Positions 1-44,169 of a stretch of DNA of 64,000 bases are shown here, piece after piece; positions within the stretch are counted from its first letter, which is position 1, and each line of letters starts with the position of its first letter. The DNA comes from Obrimoposthia wandeli (Eukaryota). The stretch lies in NCBI GenBank assembly GCA_977020255.1, contig CDROCS010001929.1, positions 186,001 to 250,000 on the forward strand. The letters are read 5' to 3'. The position numbers were made by a program, and so were the translations under genes. Below the pieces are notes generated by a model. The model ran no database searches. It saw only the letters and a program-made list of their open reading frames with translations, and was not told the DNA's origin.

Positions 1-2029
1 CATAACATAATACACAAATTATTGAAGTCGAAATACAAATACATATATCATAGATCACGTTTCCTATCTGTATTATGTTACTTTTCTATTTCCTGCACTT
101 ACCAATGTAACTATTGAGAAATGTTTTACTCCAGCGACATTTTTACTTGTATACATTTAAGTATTTCTAACAAGTCCCCTACAACATTTTAGATTTTTGG
201 TGATCGATTTTTTAAATAAGAAATTTTCTGTTTATTAAACTTTTTTATTCAACTTCGTTTAACAATTCTTTGAAATATTTGTTTTCATGAATTCATCCAA
301 CGGATTTTATCTCATTCAACTTAGCTTCTGAACGTTTAGAAAATACCCTGTCAGAATCTTTTGCTGACCACGATTTAAATATTTTTATACATTTTAAGTA
401 AACTCAATTTAATATGAATTGGTGGTAAAATAATATTTTGAATTGTAATCAGTGATAGATTATTTTAGGTTTTCTTGTCTTGAAATTAGATTAATTAAGG
501 TCTGATCATAAAATTCTGATCACAATTTAGTGACACAAACTCGCATATAACAAGTTATTAGTTAAGTATGTGCATTGTGCATCATTGAACATCGATAAAA
601 TATTTAATTAAATGTTTTACTTACAATCTTGAGTAACTTATCGGTTACATTTGAAAACTCAACTTTCATAGCGACATTTTATGTATCTTTCTCCAAATTT
701 TGTTTTTTTGTTGTTAAAAATATTAAAAATTCTAAATTAAGTTCTAACAATAAATCTATTGACAAAAATGTACTTATCTTCAGCTAGTAGCAAGTATAAA
801 ACCTGTTTCTAGTCAGTTCAAATCGAGTACATACTTGCTAAATTTTGCGATAGAGTAATTTATGTCTCTTTAAAGATTATTTTCTGTATTGATAAGCAAC
901 ATTAAGTTGAGATGAATAATTTTGCTACAAAACAATTCTATACTTACGTTGAGTGGCAGTGTCTAGAATCGAATTTATTTTTATTATATGGTAAAAATCC
1001 TTACTGCATCAATATTTTTCTGAAAAGAAAGAGAAAGTGTGATAAATAAAAAAATTAAATAGAGTAATGATAAAAATAAATAAAATACTGATATTTTAAC
1101 ACTTTTTTGATCAACTACAAAATCAAAATGATTAATATTAGCTGCAAGTAAAAACAGTTTATCTCCTAAAGAAATTGTTACTAAATTCTAATAAGAAATC
1201 ATTATATAATTCTACTTCCATTACAATATTAAGAAAGTGTATATGTATTTCTAAATGAGTTTCTTCTTTAATTTATTTATACTGAATCGAATATAAATTT
1301 TGACAACAAATATATTTATTCGAAGTAACGTATATATACATTGATATATTGTGGCTATGATAGTCAATGATATGTAAGTTAACAGGATTACAGATGTAGG
1401 TGGCGGAATATAAATTGATTGGAATTTTGCTTTGTCTTGCTTGTTGAATAATCAGCAGAAGTGATGATGTATTAGCCTGGATTTCTTTTAACCGTTTATA
1501 TTAATAAGGTTGCAATACATTTTAAATGTAGATTTTTGAGAATTTGTAGATATTTCAGCATTGCGATCCTGTACCATTTTTACTGGCTTTATTATCAATA
1601 CATCGTATTATTATTATTGCTGCGTAGCAACAGAATATAATTTATTTGATAAATGTTAAATATAAATTTTGTATGGCTAGGCATCAAGAAAATTATGAAG
1701 TAGAAACGTGAATAATTAGTCATGTATTCACATAGTATATGGAGTATATGCATAAAAATTAAGAAATTAGGATATTTATTGTGATAGAAGCAACCTCAAA
1801 TAAATAAATAAATAAAATTAAATAATAAGTTGAAATTGGGCGACATTTAATTTTGAAAAATTAATCTTAGCATTGAGCATTGGAGTATGTATATATTACA
1901 AATACATTAGATTAGAAGAACCCAAAAACATAACGGGAAAAGAAAAACTAAAATAAGATATTTGCTGCAAGAAGATTAATTGTGTACGAAGAGACATAAG
2001 AAATAGTGAAAGATAAGAGAATCGCAGAG

Positions 2030-2426
2030 AGTAGGTGAATATGTCAGTAGGTGGATGTGTCCGGTCTAATCCACATCCCCCTCTTGTCCTTTAAAACCGT
2101 GCATGTGTGTGGAGTGAAATTTCGTGTAGGTGTGTGGAGTGAAATTTTCTCTCCACACACATGCAAATCCAACCCCTCTCCTCGGGGGTGCTACAACTGT
2201 CCTTTAAAACCGTGAATGTGTGTGAAATGAAATGTGCATGTGTGTGGAGTGAAATTTTTTGAAAAAAAGCAACAAAAAAGGAGGGTCACCTACCCAAAAA
2301 AAAAAGCCCCTACCAGGCCGACCCGGCCACACTATTTCCCACTTTGGAGGTGGTGCAGCCGCCTCAACACGCCCCTCAGGGTGACCACAAGTCGCGCCTC
2401 CAGGGCGCAAAGATAACTACCAAAAG
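2030..2426 (+). repeat. Left TIR of Polinton element 1, with internal duplication and a 14-bp hairpin
   Basis: Matches the reverse complement of 8272-8532 (agtaggtggat.tgtccggtctaatccac; tcctttaaaaccgt; gtggagtgaaattttttgaaa; gataactaccaaaa). gcatgtgtgtggag (2101-2114) is the inverted repeat of 2151-2164. Confidence 0.9.
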
Positions 2427-2943
2427 TCGCCACCTCCGGGCGCTACAGTATTTTTCATTAACTTTATTCATCTACACATACCCCCCTCTCACTACTACAA
2501 CTACACATGTATACTACAAATACGTTTTTCTCACCTCCAAAAAAACATAACGATTCCATGCTTACCATTTATCTACTACAATTCATCAATTTCTTCGTGT
2601 CATATCACTATATATTACGAATTCATACAGTCTATTTTTAACTCATATTTTGAATAAATTATTGGGACATACTTAGACAAAAACTATAAATTAATTGAAT
2701 AATTTACTCCCATTGCACGTTGAACTCTGTCAACAAATATTTGAAGTACAATTTTCGAAATTTTTATTTATCAATGACATTCTCGCATTCAAACGTAGTC
2801 AAAACTTGAGAAAAGCCTATGGATTTTCAAATAAACTATTTGAATAAGACGCTATTATTGGACGATAAAAGAGGGTTAATCTGATGTTTGTGTATATAAG
2901 GAGACTTATTTTCACTATTTTTTTATAAATCAAAATCTACAGA

Positions 2944-4017
2944 ATGTCTTTCTATAATAATGTCGACTTAGATGAAGATATGGAGGTTCAGCTGTATGGG
3001 AATCTCTCCAGTACAGCAGCGAACACTACCACCATCGCAGTATATTGACTTACTTAGTCAAGACTCATCGGTGGTGAGCGAAGAAGAAGCAGCAGCAAGA
3101 GCGGAGCTGATAGAATAAGCACCATTGGCTAGCACAACCCTGACAGAAGAACCAATGGTTGCGAGAGGTGGAGTACAGAGATCACAATATATCAACCTGA
3201 CAATTCAGGATTCGATTGAGAATTGGGAAGACTGTACTCCCCGGCGGAATACAGAAGCCATTAATCCATCAACTTTGGCAGAAGCGGCAAGGAGATCATC
3301 CAAACGCTCCTGTAAATTGATCCCGCTGTCTCAGCCGGATATAGTCCTGACTCTGATGAGGATCTCTTCAGTGATGGGGTACTGTCGTATCAGGAGGATT
3401 TGACTCCATTTATCGACGAATGGATTCATCCAAGTCTCGGAGCCACTGACAACACATCTGTCGCAAATGAGTCAATGGTGGCAGAATTGAACGACGATAA
3501 TACTCAATTCTTTTGAGGCGGGGATTGGTCGAGAGGAGACTCTCCCATCTCCAGTGGACGACGGGCCAATTTTGAACGAAAGGATACCAGTCTCTCCAAT
3601 CGAGATTATTCCGCATCCCAGTCAACAACACAGGAAACTTCGATGGCACCGGCTTCATTAAGTATCAGCCACAATTTGACTAGAGCTTGGGAGGCTGCTT
3701 CTCCTCTACCAACAGCATCTACCAGCCAGAACTTAAAGAGGGCCTGGGATGAAGCTGGATTGGCCGAATTCCTGGCGAAACTGGATACTCCACAACCGGC
3801 AATTCTTCCAGATTCGTAGGGTAGCAGGATGCAGTCTCATGCCAGCTGCAGCGTGAGAAGAAGGAGAAAGAGAAAAAAAATCTCCGCGGAAGAGGAAGGC
3901 AGCAAAACTGACAACTTCTTCTTTAAGGCCATCTACAAGGCCTACAAAAAAAATTGCGACAACTCCTGTCAAAACCTTAAAGGACGGAAATTGATGCACA
4001 ACAACCGGAAATATTAA
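2944..4017 (+). pseudogene. Uncharacterised Polinton accessory gene X, copy 1 (frameshifted)
   Basis: Shares peptides with 32440-34454(-): SQYINL..ENWEDC.P.R, LI.LSQ.D.V, F.DEW, VAELN and QNLKRAW..A.L.EFLA.LDT. A TATA-like tatataag lies at 2893. Confidence 0.7.
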
Positions 4018-4255
4018 AAAAAAAACGATACTTCAGAAATTGTTGCAGATAAAATATGTAATTTACTTTCAAAATATTTAGGTAAGATTACATTTTATAT
4101 AATTTATTTTAATATTCATAGGATAATTGAAAATATGTACCAATTTTACCGAGAAAAAATGAATACGGATTATTTTGGTAATTTAATAAATTTTATTTAA
4201 TGGTTTCTTTTTAATTCGTTATAAACAAAGGGATTATATACATGTTTGGATAATT

Positions 4256-4744
4256 ATGCAAGAATATATCATAGACTTTGATGCTTTCATTCACAAAAAT
4301 GGAGATTTTATTATAAAATACTTATGTATTATGGATATAAACGACGTTTTCCATCATTTGCATTACATATTTCATGTAGATATCCCGTTAAAAAGTTTAG
4401 ATTATAAGAAGAAATTTACTAATTTATATCTCACTAATTTTTTTCATTTATTAAAATGGAAAGAAGGAAATAAACATTTTTGTGAAATATGTAATTTCGA
4501 TACAATTAAATCTAATTTTGATATTGAAAATGAATTTTTTTATGTTTTAGATGAAGTGGACGGCAAAAAGTATAAGACTTTAAAAAAATATCTTTCAAAA
4601 TTGATATTGAAAACCTTAAATATTTCACGTGATCATCTATTAAAAATTCCACGAAATATTTGCTGTCCATATCGCGATCATAGTGACCATTGCGCATATA
4701 AAAAGTGTATAAGCCTTTCTTACTATTACTTGACATGTAGATAA
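4256..4744 (+). CDS. 162-aa Polinton-associated protein, DnaQ/DEDD-exonuclease-like N-terminus with C-terminal Cys/His motif
   Basis: Intact ATG-to-stop ORF. YIIDFDAF...FIIKYLCI and CPYRDHSDHCAYKKC resemble a small ORF family I recall from arthropod Polintons. It lies inside the TIRs. Confidence 0.6.
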   Translation: MQEYIIDFDAFIHKNGDFIIKYLCIMDINDVFHHLHYIFHVDIPLKSLDYKKKFTNLYLTNFFHLLKWKEGNKHFCEICNFDTIKSNFDIENEFFYVLDEVDGKKYKTLKKYLSKLILKTLNISRDHLLKIPRNICCPYRDHSDHCAYKKCISLSYYYLTCR

Positions 4745-4860
4745 ACAATACTTTTAATTGGATAAATACAATATATAAAAAAACATTTTCAATCAATAAC
4801 AAAATACCTGAAATTGGAGGAATAAAATATATAAAAAATTAATATTATCAACCATTAACA

Positions 4861-5740
4861 GATAAAAAGTCCTTCTCATTGGTGGAAAAAAATTCATCCA
4901 ATAAGATAAGAGCATCTTTACGACGCCTCATTGTTGACTTCAAACACCTTACGCCACACCTGCCAAAATTGTTAATGAAGATCCCAAACCTGGCAAACAA
5001 GATCGCTATTTGACAAATTTCTACAATGAAGGTGTCTACTACCGATTCACCAGTTTACCCATGGGACTTAGTCAGAGTCCGGCTATCTTACAGTGGATCC
5101 TTACAGCCAAGAAACAAGCCGATGTATGGCAAAACATCCAGCCTTTCTTCCAAAAATGAGGAATCCAGATCAACATGGAAAAATCCCAACTCCAACCTGA
5201 CTCGAAAATAGAATATTGCGGCATGATCATCGACATATGACATCATCGAGAGATCAGATATGTCAGATGACGCAACAGCGGTTTTTGAACTACCTGTGTT
5301 GTGTGCTTAAATGGCCGTATGCCATAAATTATTTACAACCGGATCTCAGAAAGTTAGCCTACAAGACAATGAAGAAACATGCAAGTTCTTGGAAGTGGAG
5401 AAGGAAATCAGAACAAATTTGGGCTTCTGATGCTACCACCGAAAACATCGCTGTCGTTAAAATGAAGCCATGGAAGCAAACCATCACAGCAGCGAGGTTA
5501 GAGACGGCTAATATTTATTTGCAGGAAGCCAGAGCTCTACTTCTGGCAATGTGGATGGCAAAAAAAGGCGACACAATACTCTTCGATAATCTCGGACTGG
5601 TGTGGAGCACAAAGAACTGACGGATTCCGACACCAATGGATCAGTGGTGGACCATAGTGGGAGTCCAAGTTCTAGGAGAGATAAAAAGAATCCGCGTCCA
5701 ATTTGTGAGAACTACGGATAATCCGGCGGCTGGACCAATC
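4861..5740 (+). pseudogene. Reverse transcriptase-RNase H remnant, hepadnavirus/HEART-like or DIRS-like; YxDD region deleted
   Basis: Translated segments: FSLVEKNSSN..RRLIVDFKHL; YYRFTSLPMGLSQSPAIL; GIQINMEKSQLQPDSKIEYCGMIID; WASDATTENIAVV; NIYLQEARALL; ILFDNLGLV; VQFVRTTDNPA. Stops and deletions are present. Confidence 0.8.
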
Positions 5741-6211
5741 AGAGACCAGACTACAACAACCAGAATCGAGAGCAATTGAAACCAGCTTCTTACGGTAACC
5801 ATGCACCAGGCTATAACATGACTCTAAAAATCCAATGTGTTCCTTTTCCTACATGTGCTTTTATGCCTTCTTTGTTCTCTCAAGCATTTTTATGTTCTAT
5901 ATCGGATCAGTCACATCACTCTCTGCATGTCACTTAACAATTCCAGGCGTGATGGGATTGGTTAGACTTTTATATATAAGACTAGGCAAATATAGGAATA
6001 ACGCCAGTTTTATTTTCAGTTTAGATAATAAGCGTTGGTTCTATTAAACTAGTATAAATAAAATAGTATAATAGTACAACTGATTAAAAGCATTTAAAAG
6101 TTTGCTTTATTTTTAGCTTTTATGGTTTTTATTGTATGGGTTTCAAAAGTATTTCCAGTTAAACCAAGGTTGTTAGCGAGTTCTTCATTAAAAGAAACCC
6201 GTTTTATATTT

Positions 6212-6760
6212 CTATTTTACCATTTTTAATGTTTCACATTTATCCACATATTCACTAAATTTCTTAATTGTAAATTTACATAAATTCTCTTCACTATCTA
6301 TTTTATAATCTTTTGAAAACGTTTTCAATTCAAGTACATTATTTGATCTCATTTCAGCTAACAACAGTCTTGCTACTTTACCAGAAATATTTCTAACCGA
6401 TTTAGATGAGATAATATCTAGTTTCTTATTACCTACTGCACGTTCATTATCGAAATCGAATTGAATAGCTTCTTTTTTAGATTGAAATGTCAATTTAATA
6501 AATTTAATTGATTTTTAAATATGACTTCTTTATCTATACAATTGTAATAAAATTTTCATTTACTATCAAACCCGATCACAACATTACAACAATTTTTTGT
6601 AACAACTTTCTTTTGTAAACGAAATATGTGAGTTTTTTCTGATAGTAATTGTAGAATAATAAAAAGAAAATTCTGTTAAAGCCACTTCCCATTCTCCTTG
6701 GAGATTTATAGGATTTTCCCATTCGAGAATAAAGTTACTAGCGTCATTATCTGGTTGAGT
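6212..6760 (-). pseudogene. Polinton minor capsid (penton/Py) N-terminal fragment
   Basis: DASNFILEWENPINLQGEWEVALTEFSF, which also matches IELQGVWEVALTEFTY at 15348. Confidence 0.7.
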
Positions 6761-6801
6761 CTTTGGGCATCAGTTACTAGGTAACACCATATACATAGAT
6801 T

Positions 6802-7290
6802 TCATATTATATTAGATGTTGATATCCAAGTTGGGTCTGAATAACCATGCCATTTAACATAGTATTGTTTATGTTTACCGGCACCCTTAGATTTTAATAT
6901 TTTTTGAATACGGAAAACGCTAGGTTTATTTGATATTACTTGTAGTTCTTGCTCGTAAAATTTACCGTGAACGATATTATTGTCAGCATCTTTAATAGTA
7001 TACATTATTGGATTACCCTTTTGATCAATTCTACTTATACAAAATATTTCATGGCTCCAATTCTGATCAAAATTTTTAATAAATGGAGTAGAGCTAATTT
7101 TAGAAATTCGGACATATTCGTTTTTCTTATATTTAGCTTTTTAAATTTTTTTTATATTCCTTTATAATCAAATATTCATAGAATTTTTATCAGTAACATC
7201 AACAGGTCTCATTCCCTTGAGACTTATATGTTGAGAGTGATTATATGTATTTTCTTCATTTTTAAAAAAGTTCAATTTGAATTTTGTTTA
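6802..7290 (-). pseudogene. Polinton retroviral-like integrase, C-terminal part with chromodomain-like tail
   Basis: SLKGMRPVDVTDK; YTIKDADNNIVHGKFYEQELQ; VFRIQKILKSKG..QYYVKWHGY. Confidence 0.8.
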
Positions 7291-7469
7291 TATTAGAAGC
7301 CATTTAAGTTTTCTTTTATTTCTAACTACAAATTTGATTAATTAATTTACTTCTTTTTTCTTAATGATTATTTTTTTTGATTTCTTAGATTTTACTTAAC
7401 GTTTACGTTTCACTATCAACTTCTTAAAAGGCATTGCAAATTTATTTTTTATAATTTTTCTATATTTGT

Positions 7470-7990
7470 TTATACTTCCTTAGAATTAAATATGTATGTT
7501 ACAACACGTAAATCATCTGGGCAAGCTTGTGTAAAGTCAATAAATATAGACCCATGTGCTTGTTTAGCAGCATCATGGAATGAATCAACTAGAAAGTTCT
7601 TATTTTGAGGAAATGCCTGTCTTGCCAAGAAATCTACAACTGTTTGATCTCTAGAATTTTTAAATAAAACTAAGTAATGTACATTAAGATTTCTAGTTCT
7701 ATGGTGACCTCCTTGGGGAAAAGGATTTTGAGTGATAAATATAACTGTTACTTCATGATGTCTTGCAATTTTTGTAAAAAAATTATTAAAGTCCGATTCC
7801 TTGTTAGCTTCCTGATACAAATCATCAATTCTTACATCTTCTTTTTACAATCTTTCGCACCAATTCGCATCAAATCCTTCAATAAATTGTATTCCCTTCA
7901 ACTTGCAAACTTTTGTTAGGGTAATCTACTTTCCCCACCTCCACCATGATGCCAATAAATATTTTTGAAATTATAATTGAAAAGAGATTC
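7470..7990 (-). pseudogene. Polinton A32/FtsK-like packaging ATPase fragment (Walker A missing)
   Basis: Walker-B-like RIDDLYQEA, then VTVIFITQNPFPQGGHHRTRNLNVHYLVLFKNSRDQ...GSIFIDFTQ. Confidence 0.85.
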
Positions 7991-8019
7991 ATTTTGCAAC
8001 AATTTACATACGAAATGTG

Positions 8020-8244
8020 TCATTCCAATTCCATATATTGTCTCTGCTTCCATTCGTTGAATGGTAAATACGAAATATCATCTTCTATTCTGCCTTTATA
8101 ATTTATATTTACGAGTTTCATTAAACTAAAATTGTTTGCTGTAAATTCTTCTTTATATATGTCTGAACCTGCTTTTGTATTGCACATATTTTGTAAATAT
8201 CTTGCAAACCTATTATAATTGGATGATATATTTCTTCTAATCAA
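8020..8244 (-). CDS. Small hypothetical ORF just inside the right TIR
   Basis: 74-aa ORF, same strand as and upstream of the ATPase; no motif recognised. Confidence 0.3.
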   Translation of the reverse strand: MIRRNISSNYNRFARYLQNMCNTKAGSDIYKEEFTANNFSLMKLVNINYKGRIEDDISYLPFNEWKQRQYMELE

Positions 8245-8271
8245 TTTCGATTTTTAAAATGGATTTAGCAA

Positions 8272-8532
8272 TTTTTGGTAGTTATCTTCGCACCCGCAGG
8301 GCACAAAAATGATAGTGATACTTGCGCCCATGGGGCGCAGATTGCTGTATCCAGGGGGGGCGCGTTGGTATGGCCACATCACCCACACCCACTTTTGTTG
8401 CTTTATTTCAAAAAATTTCACTCCACGCACATGCACAAAATTTCACTTTACACACATGGACGGTTTTAAAGGAAAGTGGTAGCCCCCAGAGGGAGGGGAG
8501 GGGGTGGATTAGACCGGACATATCCACCTACT
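8272..8532 (-). repeat. Right TIR of Polinton element 1
   Basis: Reverse-complement match to 2046-2426, ending in CCTACT. Confidence 0.9.
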
Positions 8533-9500
8533 GCAGACACAAAAAATCATTCATTTATCGCTTTCTCTACAGAAACATGTATACATAACCTATTAAAGAA
8601 GAATGTTAGTTGAAGGAGGAAAACGTTTATCCCAGGAAAGCCATGACAACAGATACTTAGAAAAGGCGAACCTCCCAAGGAGTAAACAAGGAAGCATGGA
8701 GAGCAGTAAGAAGAGATACGACTGCAAGGACCACCATCGGACTGTCCAGGAAACATCTAAGAACGTTACAACACGCGTTCTTAAAATAAAGTAAGTTGTT
8801 TAGGTAGTAAAAAGTGATACCGTACATATTTATTTTCAGAAAACCTAAGTAAGTATACATATACATATATAATAAAAGTTGTACTAGTTTAAAGATTATT
8901 GGAAAATTAAAATTAATTTATTTTCGGACTGACTATTGATAGAATGAAAAAATTTCCAGACCATTCAAATACACAGGTATGCGCATACTGGTTACGTGTA
9001 GTTCACTTATTAATTTTCTTTATTCATTTTCAATTAGTAATAATAAAATATATTAGTATTTTCCACATGATACCTGTGTCCTGAAATTAAACATTTCTAA
9101 AAAATATGAAAAGTGTTTTATTGAATTTGATTTCAAAACTACTCTAGCCACAAGAAATCCAATGATTAATTTCTAATAAAACGTAGTCAAATTAGGTTAA
9201 GCTTCGTATATTGTATTTGGATTTGCTCGATTGATAACGGAGAATATTGATATTTTCTTGTTCTTAACTACTTCTTGAGAATAAAACAACTGGCATCATA
9301 AATTGCACGGATCGCACTTTCAAATAACAAATAAACAATGAAAATAATCGCTAACTATCTCCAACTTGCATTGGTTCGTAAATGTGTACTATTACAAAAG
9401 TTGGTAAAATTTACCAATGGCAAACAAATCATATTTGTGTTACTTGTTACTGAAAGTAGCACAGTAGGTCGAGATTTAACTTGAAACTCGTTAGACTTAC

Positions 9501-9658
9501 CTCTATCATATGTTTCTGGATCTGTGAAATATCATTTAAGTTTATTATTTAAAATAATTACTTTTTGCTTCTTTCTTATGTTATTATGTTTCTCGAATAT
9601 ATTCTTTAATTCAGTTTTCATTAGTGCTTCTAAATTCGAAAGTATTCGTATCAAAATA
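9501..9658 (-). CDS. Two probable exons (9562-9658 and 9501-9521) separated by a 40-bp intron
   Basis: ILSNLEALMKTELKNIFEKHNNIRKKQK/IQKHMIE. KNIFEKH resembles mitofusin KTKFEQH. Splice sites are canonical, including a gtaagt donor. Confidence 0.6.
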
Positions 9659-11216
9659 CTGAAGTTCAAGAACGTTATGATTTACTTTATTTTATGCACG
9701 TATAATTTGGAATATTTTTAAAAATTAATTCATGTACCATTTTTAAAATATTTAATTAGTGGAGCAGACAGTGACGAATCATTTTCAGTGACGAATGCTA
9801 TGGAACTACATAATATAGATGCTTGCAGATTCTGGTCTACATGTTGCCAACTATACTTTTCTGTAAACAAATGTTCGAGGTATGGAGGGATTGAGATTGT
9901 CTAGGCCATCTAAGTCAGCTAAATTGGCGTTTGTAGCACCTTAAAGTGTATTCGTGAAAATATGTTTATTAGTTTTTGGAAATTTCAGGCCATATCAAGT
10001 TATTTTATTTTTGGGTGACCAGCCCTTGGTAGTGGAATCGGTGCTGAAGTTTGCAGTTTGTCTAGGACTCGGTGAGTGAGTGCTGGCAGCACTACCCAGT
10101 TATGGACTATGTCAGCAGCGGCTCTGTTAGTTGAATAGAGTGACTAGTCGCTTATGATGAATTGACGAAAGACCAGTCACCAAGTCGATGTGTGTGTGAC
10201 TGGACGGCTGTGCTGAGCCAACCCAACTAGGTAATTTTTGGTGGACAATGAAAACATGTTCCATAAATAGCACAAGTCTTCTTCTAGAGACTGTAATGAT
10301 GCTAATTTCATTAAAGTTAATGCACGTTTCCAGTACGAAAAATACACATTTATGTCTTTAGAAAGTATTTGTTCCGTTTTATGTTATAAGTTTGTGAGTT
10401 CCATTAAGGAATAATATTATTCTTTGGTGGATTGAAATTCGTGCGCTCAAAAATTAATTTTAATATGACTGAATAAATAAAAACGTCGGGTGCAAGTTTT
10501 AGACTATTTAATGGATTGACAATTGCAAAGGTCTTGGGAAAGCGTCATGATTTAAAGTAATGTGTAGACAGAATACTGGTAGTGCAGCTCTGGTCTATTC
10601 TTCTTTCGTTCTAGGCTCGAACATCATTGACCACGTTGGGATTCTCCGTTATGAAATCAATTGTTCGTTAAAAATAGAACACATGTAGCTACAATAACCG
10701 AAACGGAGCTTCTCAACAAGTAAAGACCACTCCTGGAACTCTCGCCTAGATCAAGAAATGAAGGCCCCAAAGCTGGAGTCAATGTCATCACCGCAGTAGT
10801 CAGAAGGCACTCTAATGCTATCTGCTACACAATTGTTCTGATTTACAACCGAACCGACTTGCATATTACTGGTATTTTGTTCTTCAGTAGTCACATAGAC
10901 AGCTCTACTTGAGTAATCTTATCTCAGTCATATTTTCTTTCTGTTTCAAATATTTAGCAAATATTTTAATGCAAAAAGAAATGATTTTGTAATGGAAATT
11001 TTATTTCCGGTTAAGTCGATTTAACAATTTGAAGATTTAAACAAGCCATTGTAATGTATCGTAGCATCCTTGTATATGTACATTTCATTGTTTGTGCATT
11101 ACAAGTTTACTTTTATGTTAAACATGTTTTTTAATTCTATTTTTTGTTTCTTTAAATTATAAAACTAATTTTTAATAAAATATGTCTGAATAAAACTCAA
11201 CAAATATAATTCTAAC

Positions 11217-11440
11217 CTGTATCGTCAGATATTTTCTGAAGCTTGTTTAGAGTTCTTTCTAAAATTGTTTCTGACCTCACAGTTACAAATTGGCTGTTTT
11301 TACTTTCGGCTTCTAACATCGAAAATTCTTGGCTGACATCCATTCTATTCTTCCTCTCATTTACAAAAGTTGTTATTTTTTCTTGCAGTTTCTGCAGGTC
11401 ATGGACAATATTGCCGTACTTATGTGTGCTATCAAACGGC
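11217..11440 (-). CDS. Probable exon of the same gene (helical region)
   Basis: ttttcaag acceptor, gttaga donor and 74 open codons. The phase (2 to 1) does not join its neighbours directly, so further exons are implied. Confidence 0.55.
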
Positions 11441-12483
11441 CTTGAAAAAAATATAAATAGTCAAAATAATGAGTTAAAATAATTTGTGATAAGCTGACAT
11501 AATTTGACAATAGTAACAAAGATAAAAAATTCTGCATGAACAATGGTTTAACTTTAAATTCAATTTGTAATACTAATAGATCTATTCGATAGCATTTTTG
11601 TTACATAAATATTCTATAATATACTCAACATACGAGGAAAACGGATTTTTAACTGTAGCATTTCGTTGTAAATATTTGATTTTTAATTTTCTTTAAATAA
11701 AAAATATATATATGTTTTTATATGTTGTACATAATTACAAAGCACCCTGTAAATTTAAAGAAAACAGAAATTCATTCACTCATATTATTAAGCCATATTG
11801 ACTTTCTAAGGAAAAATATATTCCAGTATAATGTATAATGTTATTAAAAGGAGTGAGTACGAATCACACTTATCTGATTGGTCATTCACATTGCACTTAA
11901 CATTGGTTTCCAAGCTGCATGAGCATGATTCTTTGCTAAGCACTTGACTTATTTCTGAGTCTTGCATTATGGATGTTATTTGTTATCTTTCTTATGTTTG
12001 ACAAATTGACGTCATTGAATTTATAAATGTCTTGTTAAACTTCAATTTGATATATTACGAATGTGTAGAATTTATGAATGATTTTATTTCATTAAAAACA
12101 TATCAAGGAAAAGGCGGGGGAAAATTGGATAGTATGTTTAAACAAGTACATACAGTAACCGTTTTACACTTCACAAATAAAATAACACTCACTTTAAATC
12201 CATTATAAGTTTTTTTATGGAAGATTTTTTCTCTTGTATTATTCTGTTTATTTTCTCCAATTCAATGCGGTAAACTCTTTTTTTGTTTTGTTCAGGATTT
12301 TCAATGTAATTCTAAATTTGGATTTAATATAACCAAATAATTGGAAAATAAATTCAATTCTTAATATTATTAAATATAGATGATTTCTGCTATGATAAAT
12401 ATTTGAGAAAACTAAGGTATTTATAAATTATGAATGTGTTATCTTTATCCATAAATTCGTAGTTAAACTATCAGAGATTATGA

Positions 12484-12562: not shown

Positions 12563-13393
12563 ACCTAACAGGAAAATATTTTATAAAGTTTTATTGCTCA
12601 TGGTTTTCTTTAAAATACTCAACAACAATAGATTCGCCGGTTCATGTTTGATCAAATGGTTAAAAAATATTTTTATTGATTGGTGCCAATGATTTTCGTG
12701 GCGTATTTAGAAATATTCTATTATATAACGGTTTAGATAATTATCAACGTACCATCATCAATACAGAAACAAAGTGTCAGTACAAATGCAAACAACACAA
12801 TTGCAAAATAATTCATAACTAACCTTTAAATAATTGGTGAATTTTTCGAATTCCTGATAGCGAAAATTTTGATTTTCAGTTAGATTGCTTTGAACTAAAA
12901 TACAATAAAGCGGATGTAAACTTTTTTTGAATGTGGGTAAATAAAATAAAATCTGTTTGAGTAAAATCTAATCAATATAGTTTAAATATACTTTAAAATA
13001 TATTTCCTAACTGAAGGAAACAAAATGTTTGCTTTATATGATTAAAAAACCGAATAAATTAACCTATGAAATTATTATATGAAATTTTAAAGTGTGAAAG
13101 TAATATATAGTGTCGTTCCTGGAATCGTGTTACAAAGCACCTGATGGGTTTTACTATTACTATTATTACTATTATCACTATTTAGGTTCATGTAGGATTA
13201 TGGTTTGTAAACAACCAATCAAATATGTTCAAAATATACAAATTGAACGCATTCAATCTCTAAGTATCCTATTGAATATCAACAAGAAGGTTAATTTGTA
13301 TAATATATAAGTGAAAAGGGGAAGAATTTGTATGTTTGAACCATAAATGTTTCAGCACTCAGAATTTTAAAGTTTAAACCTCTATATGTTAAT

Positions 13394-13745
13394 GTGTTTG
13401 CTAGTGTAAAAGTGATTATTCATGGTATTAAAGATTTTGATTATCATTTTCATATTGTAATTTTTCTTGAAAGTTTTTTTATAAACAAATATATGTTTAA
13501 AAGACACAACTGTGTTACTGTAATTTTCATTACTCAAAGCCTGTTTCATCAAGGCGGTAAACATAGAACACGTAATTTAAATGTATATTACTTGGTTTTG
13601 TTTAAGAATCAACGCGATCAAACGGTTATTGACTATGTTTCACCTCAAGCATTTCCTTATAACAGACAATATTTTATAAATTCGTTTCTATATGAAATTA
13701 AAATCCTCGTGGTTACTTTTTCTTGATTTTACACAGTCATATCCT
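13394..13745 (+). pseudogene. Polinton packaging ATPase C-terminal fragment
   Basis: VTVIFITQSLFHQGGKHRTRNLNVYYLVLFKNQRDQTVIDY, homologous to 7470-7820(-). Confidence 0.85.
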
Positions 13746-14395
13746 GATGAATTGAGAATAAAAATCGATTTTTTCAACAACTGTATGGTATATAAACAAA
13801 AGCAAAGATAATATTTCGAAAAATAGAAATACCTAATTATGTTTATACAAATTGAAACCTGGTGATGATAACAAAGCTAAAAAGTAAATAAATTGATAAA
13901 ACAGTGTTGAGAAGGCAAAATTCTAATCGAATGCTAAAAAGCTTACGAATGTTAAAAAGTCAAAGCAGTGTAATAAAAAAATTAATGAAATTTGTTTAAA
14001 AACAAAATGGAGGTATTAACTCATTTTATCAATAAGACTATAAGCCTTTTTTGTATTTTCAACTTAAATAATAATCTAAAACGTTTTACCTTAGTTTCAA
14101 ACGATTTTAAAGGCACCTAGTTCACATACAGCTTGATTTCTCAAGTCATTTCCACCTTGTGTTATTGATAAATTGGTTGAAATTTAATTTAATATAGTTA
14201 AAGGAAAAGTAAATCTCAGTAAACATAAATCAAAATTTACAAAACTCAAGAAGGTATTACTTGATATTGTTAATACAAAAAGTTGTTCTGGTCGACAGAC
14301 ATAGTATTGCGTCATAAAGGAGGGTTTATTAGTGCACCTTGACCGATAGTTGCAACTTTATTGGGTCCCCTACTTGCTAGAGCTGTTGCCTAAAG

Positions 14396-15270
14396 TTGAG
14401 CAATCAATTAGCCTACAATATCAACAAACCGATGCGAAAATGGTTTCCGACACTATCGTACAAGACTAGTGGCCCTAACAATTTATGGCAAATGGATTTG
14501 ATAGAGATGATACCTTATGAGCGTATCAATAGTGGTTACAAATATATTTTAACATGTATTAATGTATTTACTAGATTTGGGCGTGCCTAACTTGTAAAAT
14601 CAAAATCTGTAAAAAATATATAGATGCTGCCATCAAAAATATGATTGATGTTGTACCCGATAATGTACAAACATATGCTGGAAAAGTGTTTTATAATAAA
14701 CATGTTAAAGCTTTTATTGATACATTAGAAGTAAATCAATACTCTGTGTTTTCACACTTAAAGCAGCCTTGGTTGAACAATTTAATAGGACATTGAGGGA
14801 TAAATTAAAGAAACATTTTGTTGTAATCGGATCAAAGAAATAGGTAAAGGTACTATCAAAACTTATAATTTCATATAATGACTCACCACATCGCGGTATG
14901 GGTAGTAAGAAACCTATATATGTTTCATTTGATGATTGGTTTGGTAATAATAATAAAACAATAATAAAGAAACCTAAATACAAAGTTGGAGATTTTGTTC
15001 GAATATCACGTTTAAGTACAACACATTTTATTAAACATTTCGATAATAATTGGAGTGATAAAATATTTGAAATATTGAAAACCAATTTGCGTACTAATCC
15101 CGTAATGTATAATATGATAGATGAGGATAAAAGTTCAATAGAGAGAAACTTTTATGAGCAAGAATTACAAGTTAGTGATAAACCAAAAGTATATAGGATA
15201 AAATTTAAAGGTGGTAAGATGTACGAATAAACAATATTACGTTAAGTGGTACGGATATAAAACACTATAT
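14396..15270 (+). pseudogene. Polinton DDE integrase (frameshifted)
   Basis: PNNLWQMDL..GYKYILTCINVFTRF; HRGMG..KP; KYKVGDFVRIS; NWSDKIF; FYEQELQ. Confidence 0.9.
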
Positions 15271-15347
15271 TGTATTACCATATAATAGTTGTTCAAACAC
15301 TCAACCTGATAATACCGAATTGAAATTTATTGTTGATTGATTGATTA

Positions 15348-16400
15348 ATGAATTCAATAGAACTTCAAGGTGTATGGGAAGTTGCATTGACAGAATTTAC
15401 ATATAGTAATACACCTGTTATTTTACAAAAGGATTGTGAAATTAATTATAAGAAAACGAGTTGCACTCTGAAAGCCGATACTGTCTCAGTAAGTGTTGAT
15501 TTTAAAGATGAGAAAATAATCACATTATCAAAAAGTCATGATGAAAAGCCGAAACCTGTTAAAAGTGTTATAAGGTAAATTTCAAAAGTAGAATTAAAAT
15601 CCTTAAAAAATGTTTATAATCTTTATTGTGAGTTTGGTACATATGGTGAAGTTGTAGATAAAAAGAAAAATGTACTTGTTATAAAGTCTGTAAATAAACA
15701 GAAATTTTATATAAAACTATCTGAAAAATCAAAAAATCAATTGGTTTTCATGTTTAATCAAGTAAACGCTGAAAATTACTTTGCATCTGATGATAATGGT
15801 ATTTTAACTGCTCAAAAATTCATAGATCCTGTATGTGTATCAACAAAATTTGATTATTATCACATGGAAAAGAAAAATATAAACTAAAATATTTTGTTTG
15901 ACAACGATTTCAATAATACAGATTTGACTGCATTATTTAATTACGTTATATCTTAATATAATCATATTTTTAGCATGTTTTATATTAAAAAAGATAAATT
16001 CATCAAATTAAAATTAAAATATAATATTCCAAGTATAATATTTAATACTTGTTTGGTATTTTTATTGTGTATTTATAAAAGAGAATTTACAGGTCATGGT
16101 AAAGGTATACCTCAAAGAATGTGTTAGTTTGATAATTTGTAACTGTATACTAATTTGATAGTCTATAAATGTTGGTGGGGCTAAACGTCCTCCGTTAAAA
16201 TCAATTTGATTAGATAAAAACAATAAATATGGTGATACTGCAAACATTACAATCATAAGACCAATGTATCTTCCTATAATTTCAACATATATTTTAAATA
16301 TTGAAGTAAATATTCATAATGATAGTGGGATACCAATTAACTTTGCTCATAACACAAAAACTAGTTTAACACTACATTTTCGAAAAGTTAAGTATAAACA
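15348..16400 (+). pseudogene. Polinton minor capsid (penton/Py), decayed
   Basis: N-terminal LQGVWEVALTEFTYS and C-terminal IEVNIHNDSGIPINF..LTLHFRK. Confidence 0.7.
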
Positions 16401-18496: not shown

Positions 18497-19466
18497 TTAA
18501 AATTCATTTATTAAATACACAACCGCCCTAACTAAGACTTTGCAAAAGCAAGATTGTATTGTATCATAAAGATTGACTAATACAGACCTATGATTTTTGT
18601 TTATGTCCAGTATTGTTTCACGTATCTTTTCTCCAAGTGCTGCGTAAGAAGTAAATAGTTGACCATCGTACACAATATCAGAAATTATTTTCCACAGGTC
18701 TTCTATAATGCTGATATCTGGACTCAATGCAGGCCACTCTAAGACATTAATCCCAGCCTTTACAAATACATCTCGAACACAGTGGGCTTTATGGACCGGT
18801 GAATTATCCTCTTGATAATTGAAAGTTTTACATAAATTCAATTTACACATAGGTATGCCAACCTCTCTTAACAATGAAATATACTTTCATGAATTAACTT
18901 TACCATGGATCACACTGTAGGACAATAAACCTGAAGGTAACAACATCATCCATATCATCAAAGCTCCACCATCACTATGTCTTTTCATTCTGGTTTGTTT
19001 CTCAATGTCCAGGTCCTCCAATAATCAGGCCCATCAAGACTGAATCGTTTCTCATCAGAGAATACTGATGAATTCCAGTCATGATTTTAGCAAATCCATT
19101 TCGTAATCAATATAATACGCTCTTATGTCTTCTTCTCAAATATATTACTTTTTTAATATTTCGATACTTCGTCTTAATGCGTCTAAGGTTCTTGTACAAA
19201 TATTTAAATCACAAGAAATTATTAATTTTATACATGAAATTTGTTCACCATTATCGCAAAAAGTACATATCTGGCGTTTTGTCTTCAATTTCTCTTAACT
19301 TTCTATTTTAAATTGTGGACCTCGTTTCTTACATATATTCTTAGGGTTTGTAGCGTATTAAATTTTGTGAAGATCTTCTCGATATCTTTAAAATGACACT
19401 AACTTATTTTAGGCTCTTTCCTTCTTTAAGCTGAATTGCAATTTGTCTTTCTAAGGGTTGTCTCAT
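18497..19466 (-). pseudogene. Tc1-like DD34E transposase, decayed
   Basis: VFSDEKRFSLDGPD; YQEDNSPVH; VLEWPALSPDISIIEDLW. Confidence 0.9.
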
Positions 19467-19849
19467 ATAATTATTTAGCAACTAATAATAAATAAATGAT
19501 AAAATAAAAAGTACTTACTTTGAATATATTTTTCTGTATTAAAAATTATGTCTTCTTCACTTTTTAAAATTTTATTTGACCTCATATATTATTTAAACAA
19601 TGAAGCATTAAATTATCAATTTTATTTGATTCAATTACTTTTAATGTGTTATGTTAGTTTTCATAATAAGTAACTAAAACTATGATATGGTTTAAAATAT
19701 AATTAAAATGTAATTAGTGTATTAAAAATTATGCCGAGAAGTATATATTATTCTTTTTACCAGAGATGTGTTGCGCCATAATCGTATAAATTTGAAGTTG
19801 AATTAACCATCTTTGAATCTGCGAATTGGCTTTATCAATTGGTTTTCTA

Positions 19850-21150
19850 AACAATCTTATTAATGGTATGTTGTCTGCACTCAATTTAACTTTCCTCCCA
19901 ATTAATTTTTTAAAGTTCTACCCTAATCAATACCGTTAATCATTCTTTTTCTATCTGTGAGTACCTTTTCTTCGCCTCATTTAACTTCCTTGACACATAC
20001 ATGATTGGTTGGTTGTTTTGCAATAGAACTGCTCATAAACCATATCCACTTGCATCGGTTCTTAAATCAACCTCTATATTATTGTTGAATAATTTCAATG
20101 GATTTATATTTGTTAGTTCCTCTTTTAATTTATTAAATCGCTGTTCATATATATCACTCCAGTCAAAACTCTCACTTTTCATTATGTCCCACAATTTACG
20201 TACAAACTCAGAATATCCTCGATGAAAAATTCTTACCAAAATATCCCGCTAAAACTAAAAATGTTCGTAACTCATTATGGTCTTCGGCGATTTTCATACA
20301 TTTCTGGAACACCTCAGGCGCTGAGCTTAGTTCAAAAGGCAATCGTTTATACTGGTATTTTCCAAACGGAGAACAAAATATCCCGCAAATTTTCGATATT
20401 TCTTATTTAGGAATACCTGGTGATATCCTTTCTTGGCATCAAGTTAAGAAAATATTTTTGCTCCGTTTAATTTTTTACCATGACTTCCTGAAACGATGGC
20501 ATCTGGAATGGTTCTCGTTTTACCGCTGTATTGAGATGCCTAAAGTCAATACATAATCGAATGTCGCTATTTTCCACTCATAGGTTTCTACTTCTTCAAT
20601 AATATCTGACTCCAATAATTTATATATTTCTATCTTCACTTTGTCCTTTACTGCCGGTACTTTCCTTCTCAGTATACATTATTTTTATTATACCTGAATC
20701 CTATATGATATATTTTTCATAAAATTATTATATTTTACATCTAATACTTGATGTTCATGTTCATTAAAAGAAATTGACTACACGGACATGATAATAAGAT
20801 TTAAGGCTTGGCATATCTCAGCACTTAGTAAAGTTTTATCATTAATAATATCCACTCCATTAAATTTAGCTTCAATACATTTATCTCTAAACTGTACCTC
20901 ATAAACATTACATGCTAGTATTTTTAAATTTGAGTTATATAAGTTGACAAACATAAATTGCTCGGTTTCCATTTCATTTGTGGAAAACACTTTCTGGGTA
21001 TTAAATTAACAACTGTTCCCGTATCAATAACACATAATAACTCTTTCTCATTAATTTAATCCTACGTGTTGGTAACTTTTCTAAAATTGACTCATTGTTT
21101 TCTACAGGTAAAACTTGAGGCCCTTTACATGTGCAGAAATTTGATGTCTT
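19850..21150 (-). mobile_element. Ty3/Gypsy pol remnant A (protease-RT-RNase H)
   Basis: CVIDTGTV; NSDIRLCIDFRHLN; VDLRTDASGYGL. Many stops are present. Confidence 0.8.
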
Positions 21151-36486: not shown

Positions 36487-36910
36487 CCCATGATGTTCAA
36501 TTTTGTTCATATTTTCATAATACAAGCCCTTTTACATTATAATGTAAAACTCCAGGGATCTAAATATTCTTCATATGCAGATTCTATATTATTTTTCTAT
36601 TAATGGTTTTTTTAATTTTTTTATTTCAGAATAATTAATTATTAGAAATCAACATTCATCAGCAATTCAGCATCCATGGACCATCATGGACAAGAGATCC
36701 CTTCACAATGTTCAATTGTGTTCATATTGTTATAACACAAGCCTCTTAAATTATAATGAAATGCTCCAGGCATCTAAATATTCTTTATATGCAGGTTCTA
36801 TATTATTCGTCTATTAATGGGTCTTATGAATTTCTTTTCGTTTCAGAATAATTAATTATTATACATCAACATTCATCAGCAATTCAGCATCCATCGACCA
36901 TCATGGACAA
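36487..36910 (+). repeat. Tandem duplication (about 210 bp, two copies) in the hAT 5' region
   Basis: Both copies end ttcagaataattaattatta..tcaacattcatcagcaattcagcatccat.gaccatcatggacaa. Confidence 0.85.
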
Positions 36911-40378: not shown

Positions 40379-41221
40379 AGCTCGTCAATACATTTTTTAA
40401 AAATTGGTGTTTTTTGTTTGAATTAACTATACATTTAGTACCTTATTATCCCAGTGATCTCGGTTATTTTTTGAGGTAAATTACTTCTGACTAGTACAAA
40501 ATTTTTATACGCCTTTTAAACTATATTGTTGGAAAAATCTTTAAAAAATCAAAAATTGTGAACCTGGGTTATAATGGGTTAATATAACAGAAATGTATAA
40601 ATTTACAATTATCGATTTTTTATATTAATTACGGAATATATAGCCTGAAAGAAAGAAAGGCGTGAAATTAGCATACTTAACAAATCTACTGAGAAATCCA
40701 AGAAAGTATATTGTTGGTCTCTATGTAAAACATTATTGTCATTTTCTGAAGAGATTTCAAAGACTATTTATATTAGAGGATATTTGATCTATCAGAAGTT
40801 AAATCAACAACATAAAAACGAAGCCAAGAAACCCAAAGAAACACGATTACCATTTGAAGAGCATTTAGACAGACGTACAAATTTTGTTGGAGTAAGGCAG
40901 TTTTATGAGAACTTGCTCCAACTAAATGGATCAAATATTTGTCAATCATAATGGAGGAACTACTCAGATTAACTAGAAGAGTGTGTTAAATAACAAAATG
41001 AAATAGGTGGAAACATGATGGGAAAATATTTAGACTAATGGCAAACAATATATATATATTTTTTTTAAATAAAGAAAAACACACCAAGTTCTAAGCTCCT
41101 ATTCTAATTCATAAAAGTTTAAAGCTATGACATATCTATAAATAATAAGTGACTATTGTTATTATTGAAAAATTGTCACTTTAATCTTAGTAATCACTTA
41201 ACAAATGCAGAGAAGTATAAC

Positions 41222-44131: not shown

Positions 44132-44169
44132 TTTATTTATATCTTTTTACAACAATTAGTTTTTAAAGA

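What the first reader, a model, noticed from the sequence alone, without database searches (positions are those of the whole stretch)
4861..6050. Hepadnavirus/HEART-like RT-RNase H carried inside a Polinton
Seen: FSLVEKNSSN..RLIVDF, LPMGLSQSP, SDAT, IYLQE, ILFDN and VRTTDNPA, in order over about 900 bp. A TATA-like tatataag follows at about 5973. No protease, DDE integrase or tyrosine recombinase is adjacent, and the YxDD region is deleted. Established: HBV Pol has FLVDKNPHN..RLVVDF, IPMGVGLSP, ADAT, IHTAE, GTDN and VPSALNPAD, and hepadnavirus-related HEART retroelements are described from invertebrates. DIRS RTs share several of these motifs (INxEKSxLxP) but usually have DAS and a downstream recombinase. 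Inference: this is a hepadna-lineage retroelement or endogenised virus associated with a Polinton, possibly using it as a vehicle. I do not know this pairing as described.
Basis: partly seen in the sequence, partly recalled or inferred. Interest (0 to 1): 0.8.

Follow-up and report, generated by a model that had tools for sequence, protein, structure and literature searches.

The report
Dead reverse-transcriptase relic beside Polinton remnants
This is a short, broken leftover of a retroelement's reverse transcriptase/RNase H gene that sits next to, not demonstrably inside, scraps of a Polinton in a transposon graveyard, and its claimed kinship with hepatitis-B-like elements can be neither shown nor excluded with the data at hand.

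Summary
The quoted motifs are real and lie in order on the + strand (4843-5779). They form a decayed RT-RNase H relic. It has 2 frameshifts, 2 premature stops, an internal deletion that removes the YxDD loop, no recognisable motif-A aspartate and no 5' part. A profile built from tyrosine-recombinase (DIRS-order) retroelement RTs ranks its three RT stretches 1st, 4th and 5th of 1962 open stretches in the window, collinear. No close relative exists in 1.84 billion protein representatives.

Family assignment is unresolved. By eye against a published RT alignment, it shares 30-31 of 81 positions with tick HEART elements and 26-27 with DIRS/PAT. Of ten signature positions, six are HEART-like and four DIRS-like. 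RNase H segment lengths fit DIRS-order elements, while its last motif has the spacing seen in nackednavirus P proteins. No tyrosine recombinase, methyltransferase, terminal repeats, TP domain or core gene was found.

The Polinton claim is not supported. Only an ATPase-like and an integrase-chromodomain remnant lie to the right, on the opposite strand, within a block with its own inverted ends starting at 6044. The left flank holds unrelated units. Retroelements inside Polinton-like elements are already described (Ngaro in Cafeteria).

This is an ordinary relic, with low interest.

The parts
4843..5779 (+). Decayed RT-RNase H (pol) relic, given as one part. It has 2 frameshifts, 2 premature stops, at least 1 internal deletion (the YxDD segment), a connection about 40 residues shorter than in DIRS-order references, no recognisable motif-A aspartate and no 5' part.
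   Evidence: Translations; Pfam RVT_1 E 0.15; PDB hits all retroviral RTs; motif order unique in the window; local RT profile ranks 1, 4 and 5 of 1962, collinear; GC 0.36-0.46 against a 0.21-0.26 background.
5780..6043 (+). Tail after the relic's last stop. GC falls to background by about 5960. It contains TATATAAG at 5973-5980.
   Evidence: TATATAAG is at chance frequency.
4256..4744 (+). Left neighbour: an intact 162-aa ORF in AT-rich DNA, of unknown identity and not shown to be Polinton-derived.
   Evidence: no Pfam family; only weak PHROG hits; AlphaFold pLDDT 34; no paralogue in the window.
2824..4017 (+). Further left: a separate GC-rich gene-like unit with its own TATA-containing upstream segment and its own stop. 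Its paralogue at 34566-32433 (-) has no RT downstream.
   Evidence: no Pfam family.
6044..8892 (.). Right neighbour: a block bounded by 14-nt perfect inverted ends (each starting TTAA) that holds the Polinton-like remnants and one copy of a dispersed repeat.
6805..7140 (-). Integrase C-terminal / chromodomain remnant (Polinton-like or Gypsy-like integrase tail).
   Evidence: Pfam Chromo E 8e-6; paralogue at 14844-15227 (+).
7473..7844 (-). Packaging-ATPase-like remnant. The label rests on my own recollection of Polinton ATPases and was not confirmed by any tool.
   Evidence: 53% identical paralogue at 13340-13723 (+); no hit in Pfam, PHROG, PDB or IMG/VR.

Best explanation
The region is a non-functional fossil of a retroelement pol gene (RT followed by RNase H). 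What the sequence shows directly: it lacks the 5' part of the gene, the catalytic YxDD loop and a recognisable motif-A aspartate. It is also interrupted by 2 frameshifts and 2 premature stops, so it cannot encode an active enzyme. What is inferred: when alive, the parent element copied its RNA into DNA with this RT-RNase H. Its RT belongs to the neighbourhood of the RT tree that holds the tyrosine-recombinase retroelements (DIRS1/PAT/Ngaro), the HEART elements and the hepadnavirus relatives. I cannot assign it to one of these. Because DIRS-order elements are far more widespread, I think a DIRS-order or allied lineage is the more likely source (about 0.5), a HEART/hepadna-related lineage is possible (about 0.25), and another or unplaceable lineage takes the rest. 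Its position beside Polinton-like remnants is best read as coincidental nesting in a transposon-rich, AT-rich stretch. Neither a cargo relation nor a vehicle relation is indicated.
For: RT identity comes from collinear weak hits. Decay comes from the translations and the missing profile positions. There is no close relative in 1.84e9 representative proteins, the word-indexed 5.8e9 set or IMG/VR. A degenerate DNA pattern taken from the relic's own LPxG-region peptide pulled 19 metagenome loci. Thirteen of them carry long RT frames, and at least 7 carry a Phage_integrase-type tyrosine recombinase beside the RT. Three show an RT-RNaseH-Dam-like methyltransferase architecture. RNase H segment lengths in the relic are 32, 20 and 45 residues (first Asp to Glu, Glu to second Asp, second Asp to the terminal Asn motif). 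The DIRS-order loci have 32, 25 and 46-47. On context: the Polinton-like paralogy ends at about 6593, inverted ends lie at 6044/8892, the left flank has no similarity to any Polinton-like part of the window, and the unit at 2824-4017 ends with its own stop in both copies. The window also holds Gypsy-like, piggyBac, mariner and other transposon relics.
Against: The family is unresolved. Single HEART RT domains share 30-31 of 81 by-eye aligned positions, against 26-27 for DIRS/PAT and 25-31 of 92 for the DIRS-order metagenome loci. Six of ten signature positions are HEART-like, for example LT in place of LN, the LT.F string, the spacing before LPxG and GIQ.N. The RNase H stretches score about -1.5 bits against the DIRS-order RH profile. 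The terminal motif is one residue shorter than N-x-x-A-D-x-L-S-R of the DIRS-order loci, and it has the spacing found by word search in nackednavirus P proteins. The reading frame stops about a dozen codons after that motif, with no methyltransferase or recombinase after it. That end point is what a HEART/hepadna-type pol would show. The host is unknown, and only one 64-kb window was seen, so a genome-wide link with Polintons cannot be excluded.
Confidence: 0.75

Rival explanations
1. The relic comes from a HEART-like or otherwise hepadnavirus-related lineage. It would be either a retroelement or an endogenised reverse-transcribing DNA virus, whose pol ends right after RNase H and which has no recombinase or integrase of its own.
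For: By-eye identity to tick HEART RT domains is slightly higher than to DIRS/PAT, and six of ten signature positions are HEART-like. LPMG occurs in proto-nackednavirus RTs. SDAT and DNPA occur in the P-protein alignment of hepadnavirus relatives, and the terminal RNase H motif has their spacing. The frame ends soon after that motif, and no MT or YR follows.
Against: The margin is about 4 identities in 81, which is not significant. Four signature positions are DIRS/PAT-like: LS.SP after LPxG, E-KS, E-Y before the LG position, and K-initial strings. LPMG and the G.YYRF..LP.G string also occur in recombinase-linked RTs. The segment between the second catalytic Asp and the terminal motif is 45 residues in the relic, against 34 in the one nackednavirus sequence seen and 46-47 in DIRS-order loci. 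There is no Pfam DNA_pol_viral_N/C hit, and no TP domain or core gene. HEART elements are few and so far reported from arthropods.
Confidence: 0.25
2. The relic is a 5'- and 3'-truncated piece of a DIRS-order (DIRS1/PAT-like) tyrosine-recombinase retrotransposon.
For: A profile from recombinase-linked RTs finds all three RT stretches collinear. The E-KS-x-L-x-P and LS.SP strings and the RNase H segment lengths fit. DIRS-order elements are widespread from cnidarians to vertebrates (PMC3266345).
Against: No recombinase, methyltransferase, inverted terminal or split direct repeats are in the window. The RH profile score is nil. The asparagine of the LN motif is replaced and the terminal RH motif is one residue short. 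The profile hit on the LPxG stretch is inflated, because the loci were selected by that motif.
Confidence: 0.5
3. The retroelement is functionally tied to a Polinton, either carried as cargo or using it as a vehicle.
For: Polinton-like remnants lie within 1-2 kb. GC-rich Ngaro elements inside AT-rich Polinton-like virophage elements are documented in Cafeteria (PMC8547959).
Against: The remnants are on one side only and on the opposite strand. They sit within a block that has its own inverted ends starting at 6044, outside the relic. The nearest pPolB fragment is 38 kb away. The left flank is unrelated. Both partners are dead fragments.
Confidence: 0.04
4. The motifs are a chance constellation in non-coding DNA.
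For: Each single hit is weak (Pfam E 0.15, PDB E 0.13 or worse). The RNase H stretches have no database hit at all.
Against: Three adjacent stretches rank 1st, 4th and 5th of 1962 and are collinear in an RT profile. The motif order is unique in the window. The region is a GC-rich island with long open stretches.
Confidence: 0.02

Closest known systems
DIRS-order tyrosine-recombinase retrotransposons (DIRS1, PAT-like; Ngaro less so)
   Same: They share the RT motif set (R..D..L[N], Y/F-L-x-F, LPxG-LS-x-P, N-x-E-K-S-x-L-x-P). RNase H follows the RT, with the same lengths between catalytic residues. There is no protease or DDE integrase.
   Different: No recombinase, methyltransferase or characteristic repeats are present. 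The LN asparagine is replaced. The stretch before LPxG is 1-2 residues longer. The terminal RNase H motif is one residue shorter. The RNase H has no profile-level similarity.
HEART retroelements (Gong and Han 2018; tick sequences in Data set S4 of PMC12691608)
   Same: They share LT in place of LN, the LT.F string, the same spacing before LPxG, a shared six-residue run before LPxG with one tick element, and GIQ.N before motif E. The pol has nothing recognisable after RNase H.
   Different: The host here is unknown and AT-rich, unlike ticks.
Hepadnavirus relatives (nackedna- and proto-nackednaviruses) and their endogenous copies
   Same: They share LPMG, the SDAT string and the N-P-A-x-x-P-x-R spacing at the end of RNase H, with the frame ending about a dozen residues later.
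   Different: There is no TP domain, spacer or core gene, and no Pfam DNA_pol_viral_N/C hit. The last RNase H segment is about 11 residues longer than in the one nackednavirus sequence seen. The RT stretches are no closer to these viruses than to DIRS (about 26 of 81).
Ngaro retrotransposons inserted in endogenous mavirus-like (Polinton-like) elements of Cafeteria burkhardae (PMC8547959)
   Same: In both cases a GC-rich RT-RNase H retroelement lies in or next to AT-rich Polinton-like DNA.
   Different: There the insertions are complete 6-kb elements with repeats and a recombinase, lie demonstrably inside intact virophage genomes, and are statistically enriched. Here a 0.9-kb relic lies beside two gene remnants.

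Membership tests
Retroelement reverse transcriptase (Pfam RVT_1 type) | Collinear RT motifs (fingers R..D..LN, palm LPxG..SP, motif E N.EKS) | tested here: met
   weak single hits, but ranks 1, 4 and 5 of 1962 and collinear.
Retroelement reverse transcriptase (Pfam RVT_1 type) | Catalytic motif A aspartate and motif C YxDD | tested here: not met
   No YxDD in any frame. Profile positions about 60-85 and 123-166 have no counterpart.
HEART retroelements | RT (and RNase H) group with HEART/Blubervirales in a phylogeny | tested here: inconclusive
   No digital HEART reference could be obtained. By eye, 30-31 of 81 positions match HEART against 26-27 for DIRS/PAT, and signature positions split 6 to 4. 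No phylogeny was run.
HEART retroelements | Pol-only element without LTRs, integrase or recombinase | tested here: inconclusive
   Nothing of that kind is next to the relic, but the relic is truncated, so absence says little.
Hepadnaviridae / Blubervirales (endogenous copy) | P protein with terminal-protein domain and hepadnaviral RT/RNase H signatures (Pfam DNA_pol_viral_N, DNA_pol_viral_C) | tested here: not met
   No such Pfam hit at E up to 10 for any stretch. There is no coding sequence upstream that continues the frame.
Hepadnaviridae / Blubervirales (endogenous copy) | Core (capsid) gene adjacent to or overlapping P | tested here: not met
   The neighbouring ORFs have no family hit, and the upstream unit is an independent paralogous gene-like unit.
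DIRS order (DIRS1, PAT, Ngaro) | Tyrosine recombinase gene in the element | tested here: not met
   A profile of 6 recombinase domains from the retrieved loci finds nothing in 1962 open stretches (best E 1.4).
DIRS order (DIRS1, PAT, Ngaro) | Methyltransferase domain after RNase H (DIRS1/PAT) | tested here: not met
   The local MT profile gave no hit, and the frame stops soon after RNase H.
DIRS order (DIRS1, PAT, Ngaro) | Inverted terminal repeats with internal complementary regions, or split direct repeats | tested here: not met
   The repeat finder on 1-12000 shows none around the relic. The 2045-2437/8261-8533 arms are two copies of a dispersed repeat without a shared target duplication.
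DIRS order (DIRS1, PAT, Ngaro) | RT and RNase H of DIRS type | tested here: inconclusive
   The RT stretches match the profile and the RH segment lengths fit. However, the RH profile score is about -1.5 bits and several signature residues differ.
Polinton/Maverick as carrier | Relic lies between the terminal inverted repeats of one element that carries pPolB, rve integrase, ATPase, protease and capsid genes | tested here: not met
   Only ATPase-like and integrase-tail remnants are present, on one side and on the opposite strand. Inverted ends at 6044/8892 exclude the relic. The pPolB fragment is at 44167-44580.
Ty3/Gypsy LTR retrotransposons | Protease upstream and integrase downstream of RT-RNase H; RNase H of Pfam RT_RNaseH type | tested here: not met
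   None is adjacent and there is no Pfam RNase H hit. By contrast, the Gypsy-like relic at about 19700-21060 is recognised by Pfam on stretches of 30-71 residues.

The most novel reading that the evidence does not exclude
The relic descends from a HEART-like, hepadnavirus-related retroelement lineage in an AT-rich host that is not a tick. That would widen the known range of the closest non-viral relatives of hepadnaviruses. The lineage would combine HEART-like fingers and palm with DIRS-like motif E and RNase H lengths, as expected of a form intermediate between recombinase retroelements and the hepadnavirus branch.
Probability: 0.2. Interest if true: 0.55.

Novelty: new member of a known kind. 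Interest (0 to 1): 0.2.

Why it matters
If the relic really belonged to the HEART/hepadnavirus branch, it would add a host lineage and an intermediate sequence type to a very small group. That group bears on how hepadnaviruses arose from retroelements. As it stands, it is one more dead retroelement fragment in a repeat-rich region. It gives no evidence that retroelements ride in Polintons, and a retroelement-in-Polinton-like association is already on record in Cafeteria. Its practical value is as a seed for a descriptive survey of the host genome.

Tried and rejected
Searches that found nothing:
- The longest single-frame stretch found nothing in 1.84e9 representative proteins or in the word-indexed search at E up to 10.
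- The LPxG stretch found no candidate.
- IMG/VR scans with both stretches were empty.
- PDB gave nothing for the RNase H stretch.
- Ten window ORFs are not in the 15-billion-protein collection, so the host could not be named. Rfam and tRNA scans were empty.
- A transposase-like ORF has relatives in fish, spider, shrimp and metagenomes and does not identify the host.

Pattern scans:
- A strict DNA pattern from the relic's own peptide found nothing in metagenomes. The looser one gave the 19 loci used as references.
- A pattern from the terminal RNase H motif gave only chance hits in phage-like contigs.

Structure: AlphaFold models of the RNase H stretch and of the 162-aa neighbour were too poor (pLDDT 38 and 34). 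Fold searches were therefore not run.

Polinton ATPase: attempts to confirm the label failed.

Rejected readings:
- The 2045-2437/8261-8533 inverted arms are not ends of one element, because they share no target duplication.
- The GC-rich unit at 2824-4017 is not the 5' part of the retroelement. Its paralogue ends at the same point with its own stop and has no RT after it.

Left out: a real phylogeny with the published HEART/DIRS alignment. Those sequences exist only as text in a paper's supplement, and long strings may not be typed into a call. The Gong and Han 2018 paper is not held.

Slips, stated as required, with nothing deleted:
2. Their ends coincide with its breaks. This report gives counts only.

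Full report
OBSERVATION

They are distributed over the three forward frames. I treated the region as five single-frame stretches and queried each one alone.

Database support for each stretch is weak:
- Pfam gives RVT_1 at E 0.15 for the stretch with LPMGLSQSP and nothing for the others.
- All 11 weak PDB hits of that stretch are retroviral reverse transcriptases, aligned at the same LPxG..SP motif.

The combination is not chance:
- A regex scan of all six frames finds only one place in 64 kb where LPxG..SP, N.EKS and DA[ST] follow each other on one strand.
Searched against all 1962 open stretches of at least 20 residues in the window, it ranks the three RT stretches 1st (30 bits), 4th (9.7 bits) and 5th (8.9 bits).
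- These three map to profile positions 30-59, 86-122 and 167-191, so they are collinear.
- Ranks 2 and 3 belong to an unrelated Gypsy-like relic elsewhere in the window.
- The first rank is inflated, because the reference loci were selected through a motif of that stretch. Ranks 4 and 5 are not affected by this.

The region is also a GC island (0.36-0.46) in a 0.21-0.26 background.

STATE OF THE GENE

The relic (4843-5779) has these defects:
- 2 frameshifts and 2 premature stops.
- One internal deletion that removes the segment holding YxDD.
- No recognisable motif-A aspartate.
- A connection between motif E and RNase H about 40 residues shorter than in the reference elements.
- No sequence for the N-terminal part of the RT or anything upstream of it.

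It cannot encode an active enzyme.

The RNase H reading rests on motif order and spacing only. The lengths are 32 residues from the first Asp to the Glu, 20 from the Glu to the second Asp, and 45 from the second Asp to the terminal Asn motif. No database or profile recognises it, and a single-sequence AlphaFold model is uninformative (pLDDT 38).

RELATIVES

No protein among 1.84 billion cluster representatives matches the longest stretch at E up to 0.001. The word-indexed searches and IMG/VR are empty as well.

To obtain natural comparators, I back-translated a peptide of the relic itself (G.Y[YF]R[FY]..LP[FM]G....P) into a degenerate DNA pattern. The strict version found nothing in metagenome contigs. 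The looser version found 19 loci:
- Thirteen hold long RT frames.
- Pfam shows RVT_1 in all ten tested.
- L005 and L006 show RT_RNaseH plus a Dam-like methyltransferase, L004 shows the Dam-like methyltransferase, and L009, L010 and L015 show a C5 DNA methylase.
- L001, L004, L005, L006, L007, L018 and L019 carry a Phage_integrase-type tyrosine recombinase beside the RT.

So every retrieved relative with readable context is a DIRS-order retroelement. The six-residue run that looks HEART-specific is therefore not specific.

HEART VERSUS DIRS

The only HEART sequences I could see are seven tick RT domains in Data set S4 of PMC12691608, read as text. They could not be moved into a script, so I counted by eye, stretch by stretch.
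- Single HEART sequences share 30-31 of 81 aligned positions with the relic.
- Single DIRS/PAT sequences share 26-27, and proto-nackednavirus about 26.
- Against the DIRS-order metagenome loci, a profile alignment gives 25-31 of 92.

A margin of about four identities is not significant.

I also looked at ten positions where HEART and DIRS/PAT are each uniform but differ from each other.
- Six are HEART-like in the relic: LT for LN; the string after it; LT.F; the length before LPxG; Q after the SP motif; GIQ.N.
- Four are DIRS/PAT-like: K-initial strings after motif 2; LS.SP; E-KS; E-Y before the LG position.

In RNase H, the three segment lengths fit the DIRS-order loci, which have 32, 25 and 46-47. 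The last segment fits poorly with the one nackednavirus sequence that a word search happened to show, which has 34.

Three points go the other way:
- The terminal motif is one residue shorter than N-x-x-A-D-x-L-S-R of the DIRS-order loci, and it has the spacing and prolines of the nackednavirus P proteins.
- SDAT, rather than SDAS, occurs in four of those P proteins and in none of 14 DIRS-order frames.
- The frame stops about a dozen codons after the motif. No methyltransferase or recombinase remnant lies anywhere in the window.

Pfam's silence on the RNase H is not informative. Intact DIRS-order frames such as L001, L004, L011 and L018 also get no Pfam RNase H hit.

I conclude that the relic belongs to the DIRS/HEART/hepadnavirus-relative neighbourhood of RTs and cannot be placed more finely here. 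Kojima (PMC12440569) notes that HEART has few samples, often mutated at conserved RT residues, and that its mobilisation mechanism is unresolved. DIRS1-like elements are reported from 61 species, from cnidarians to sauropsids (PMC3266345). On that prior I put DIRS-order or allied at about 0.5, HEART/hepadna-related at about 0.25, and other or unplaceable lineages at about 0.25.

CONTEXT

To the right, the relic's GC-rich tail fades by about 5960.
- At 6044 begins a block bounded by 14-nt perfect inverted ends (6044-6057 and 8879-8892, each starting TTAA).
- Inside this block, on the opposite strand, lie an integrase C-terminal chromodomain remnant (6805-7140; Pfam Chromo E 8e-6) and an ATPase-like remnant (7473-7844).
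- Both are paralogous to a second module at 13340-15473 on the + strand. The paralogy ends at about 6593.
- The ATPase label is my recollection only. Pfam, PHROGs, PDB and IMG/VR did not confirm it.
- The only pPolB trace is at 44167-44580 (DNA_pol_B_2, E 8e-4).

To the left lie two unrelated units.
- An intact 162-aa ORF of unknown identity sits in AT-rich DNA (4256-4744).
- A GC-rich gene-like unit (2824-4017) has its own TATA-containing upstream segment and its own stop. Its paralogue at 34566-32433 (-) ends at the same point and has no RT after it.
- Nothing on the left resembles the Polinton-like parts.
- The long inverted arms at 2045-2437 and 8261-8533 are two copies of a dispersed repeat without a shared target duplication.

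The relic is therefore beside Polinton-like scraps, not shown to be inside a Polinton. The TATATAAG at 5973 is at chance frequency.

COMPARISON WITH WHAT IS KNOWN

A link between recombinase retroelements and Polinton-like elements is already described. In Cafeteria burkhardae, about one in four endogenous mavirus-like elements is interrupted by a GC-rich Ngaro retrotransposon, with a statistical preference for some Ngaro types (PMC8547959). The present case lacks everything that made that case convincing: complete elements, clear boundaries and counts.

VERDICT

This is a real but dead RT-RNase H relic of an unresolved family in the DIRS/HEART neighbourhood, lying in a transposon graveyard. 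The hepadnavirus-lineage reading is possible but unproven, and the Polinton-vehicle reading is unsupported. Interest is low.

SLIPS

My reasoning, notebook and some outputs list the coordinates of the single-frame query stretches, whose ends coincide with the breaks.

Noticed in passing
window about 19700-21060, - strand: A second, unrelated and more fragmented pol relic of Ty3/Gypsy type. It has a protease-like DTG stretch, RT motifs and an RNase H. Pfam recognises the RNase H (RT_RNaseH/_2, E about 1e-6) on stretches of only 30-71 residues. It served as an internal control.
   Followed up: partly
window 2824-4017 (+) and 34566-32433 (-): Two paralogous GC-rich (0.47-0.50) gene-like units. 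They share an 83%-identical upstream segment containing TATATAAG, and each has its own stop codon. One copy carries about 700 bp extra inside. No Pfam family was found, so the nature of the units (host gene family or unknown mobile element) is open.
   Followed up: partly
window 4256-4744 (+): An intact 162-aa ORF with a Cys/His-rich C-terminal part, in very AT-rich DNA right next to the relic. It has no Pfam family, only weak PHROG hits and no paralogue in the window. The AlphaFold model was useless (pLDDT 34).
   Followed up: partly
window 2045-2437 (+), 8261-8533 (-), 62139-62257 (+): A dispersed GC-rich repeat starting CAGTAGGTGGAT, with internal 25-36-nt sub-repeats. Two copies lie in inverted orientation 6 kb apart and mimic terminal repeats, but they share no target duplication.
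   Followed up: partly
window 6044-6057 and 8879-8892: Perfect 14-nt inverted ends, each beginning with TTAA, enclose a 2.85-kb block that contains the Polinton-like remnants. This could be the ends of a TTAA-targeting cut-and-paste element or of a deletion derivative.
   Followed up: no
window 6593-7844 (-) and 13340-15473 (+): Two inverted paralogous modules (ATPase-like stretch plus integrase C-terminal chromodomain), about 50-68% identical at protein level. One has most of the integrase body missing.
   Followed up: partly
window 36852-38295 (+), 39244-40015 (+), 18500-18886 (-), 41201-41482 (-), 44167-44580 (+): Two adjacent long ORFs of a transposase-like protein have 50-70% identical relatives in fish, a spider, a shrimp and many metagenome contigs, which suggests horizontal spread. 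The other coordinates hold a piggyBac transposase fragment (DDE_Tnp_1_7, E 1e-28), a Tc1/mariner fragment (DDE_3), a Dynamin_N fragment and a DNA_pol_B_2 fragment.
   Followed up: partly
metagenome loci L017:752-2800, L009, L010, L015: L017 has one open frame with an RT domain followed by a vitamin K epoxide reductase domain (VKOR, E 2e-38). L009, L010 and L015 have a C5 cytosine methylase and an RT in one frame, as described for some protist retroelements.
   Followed up: no
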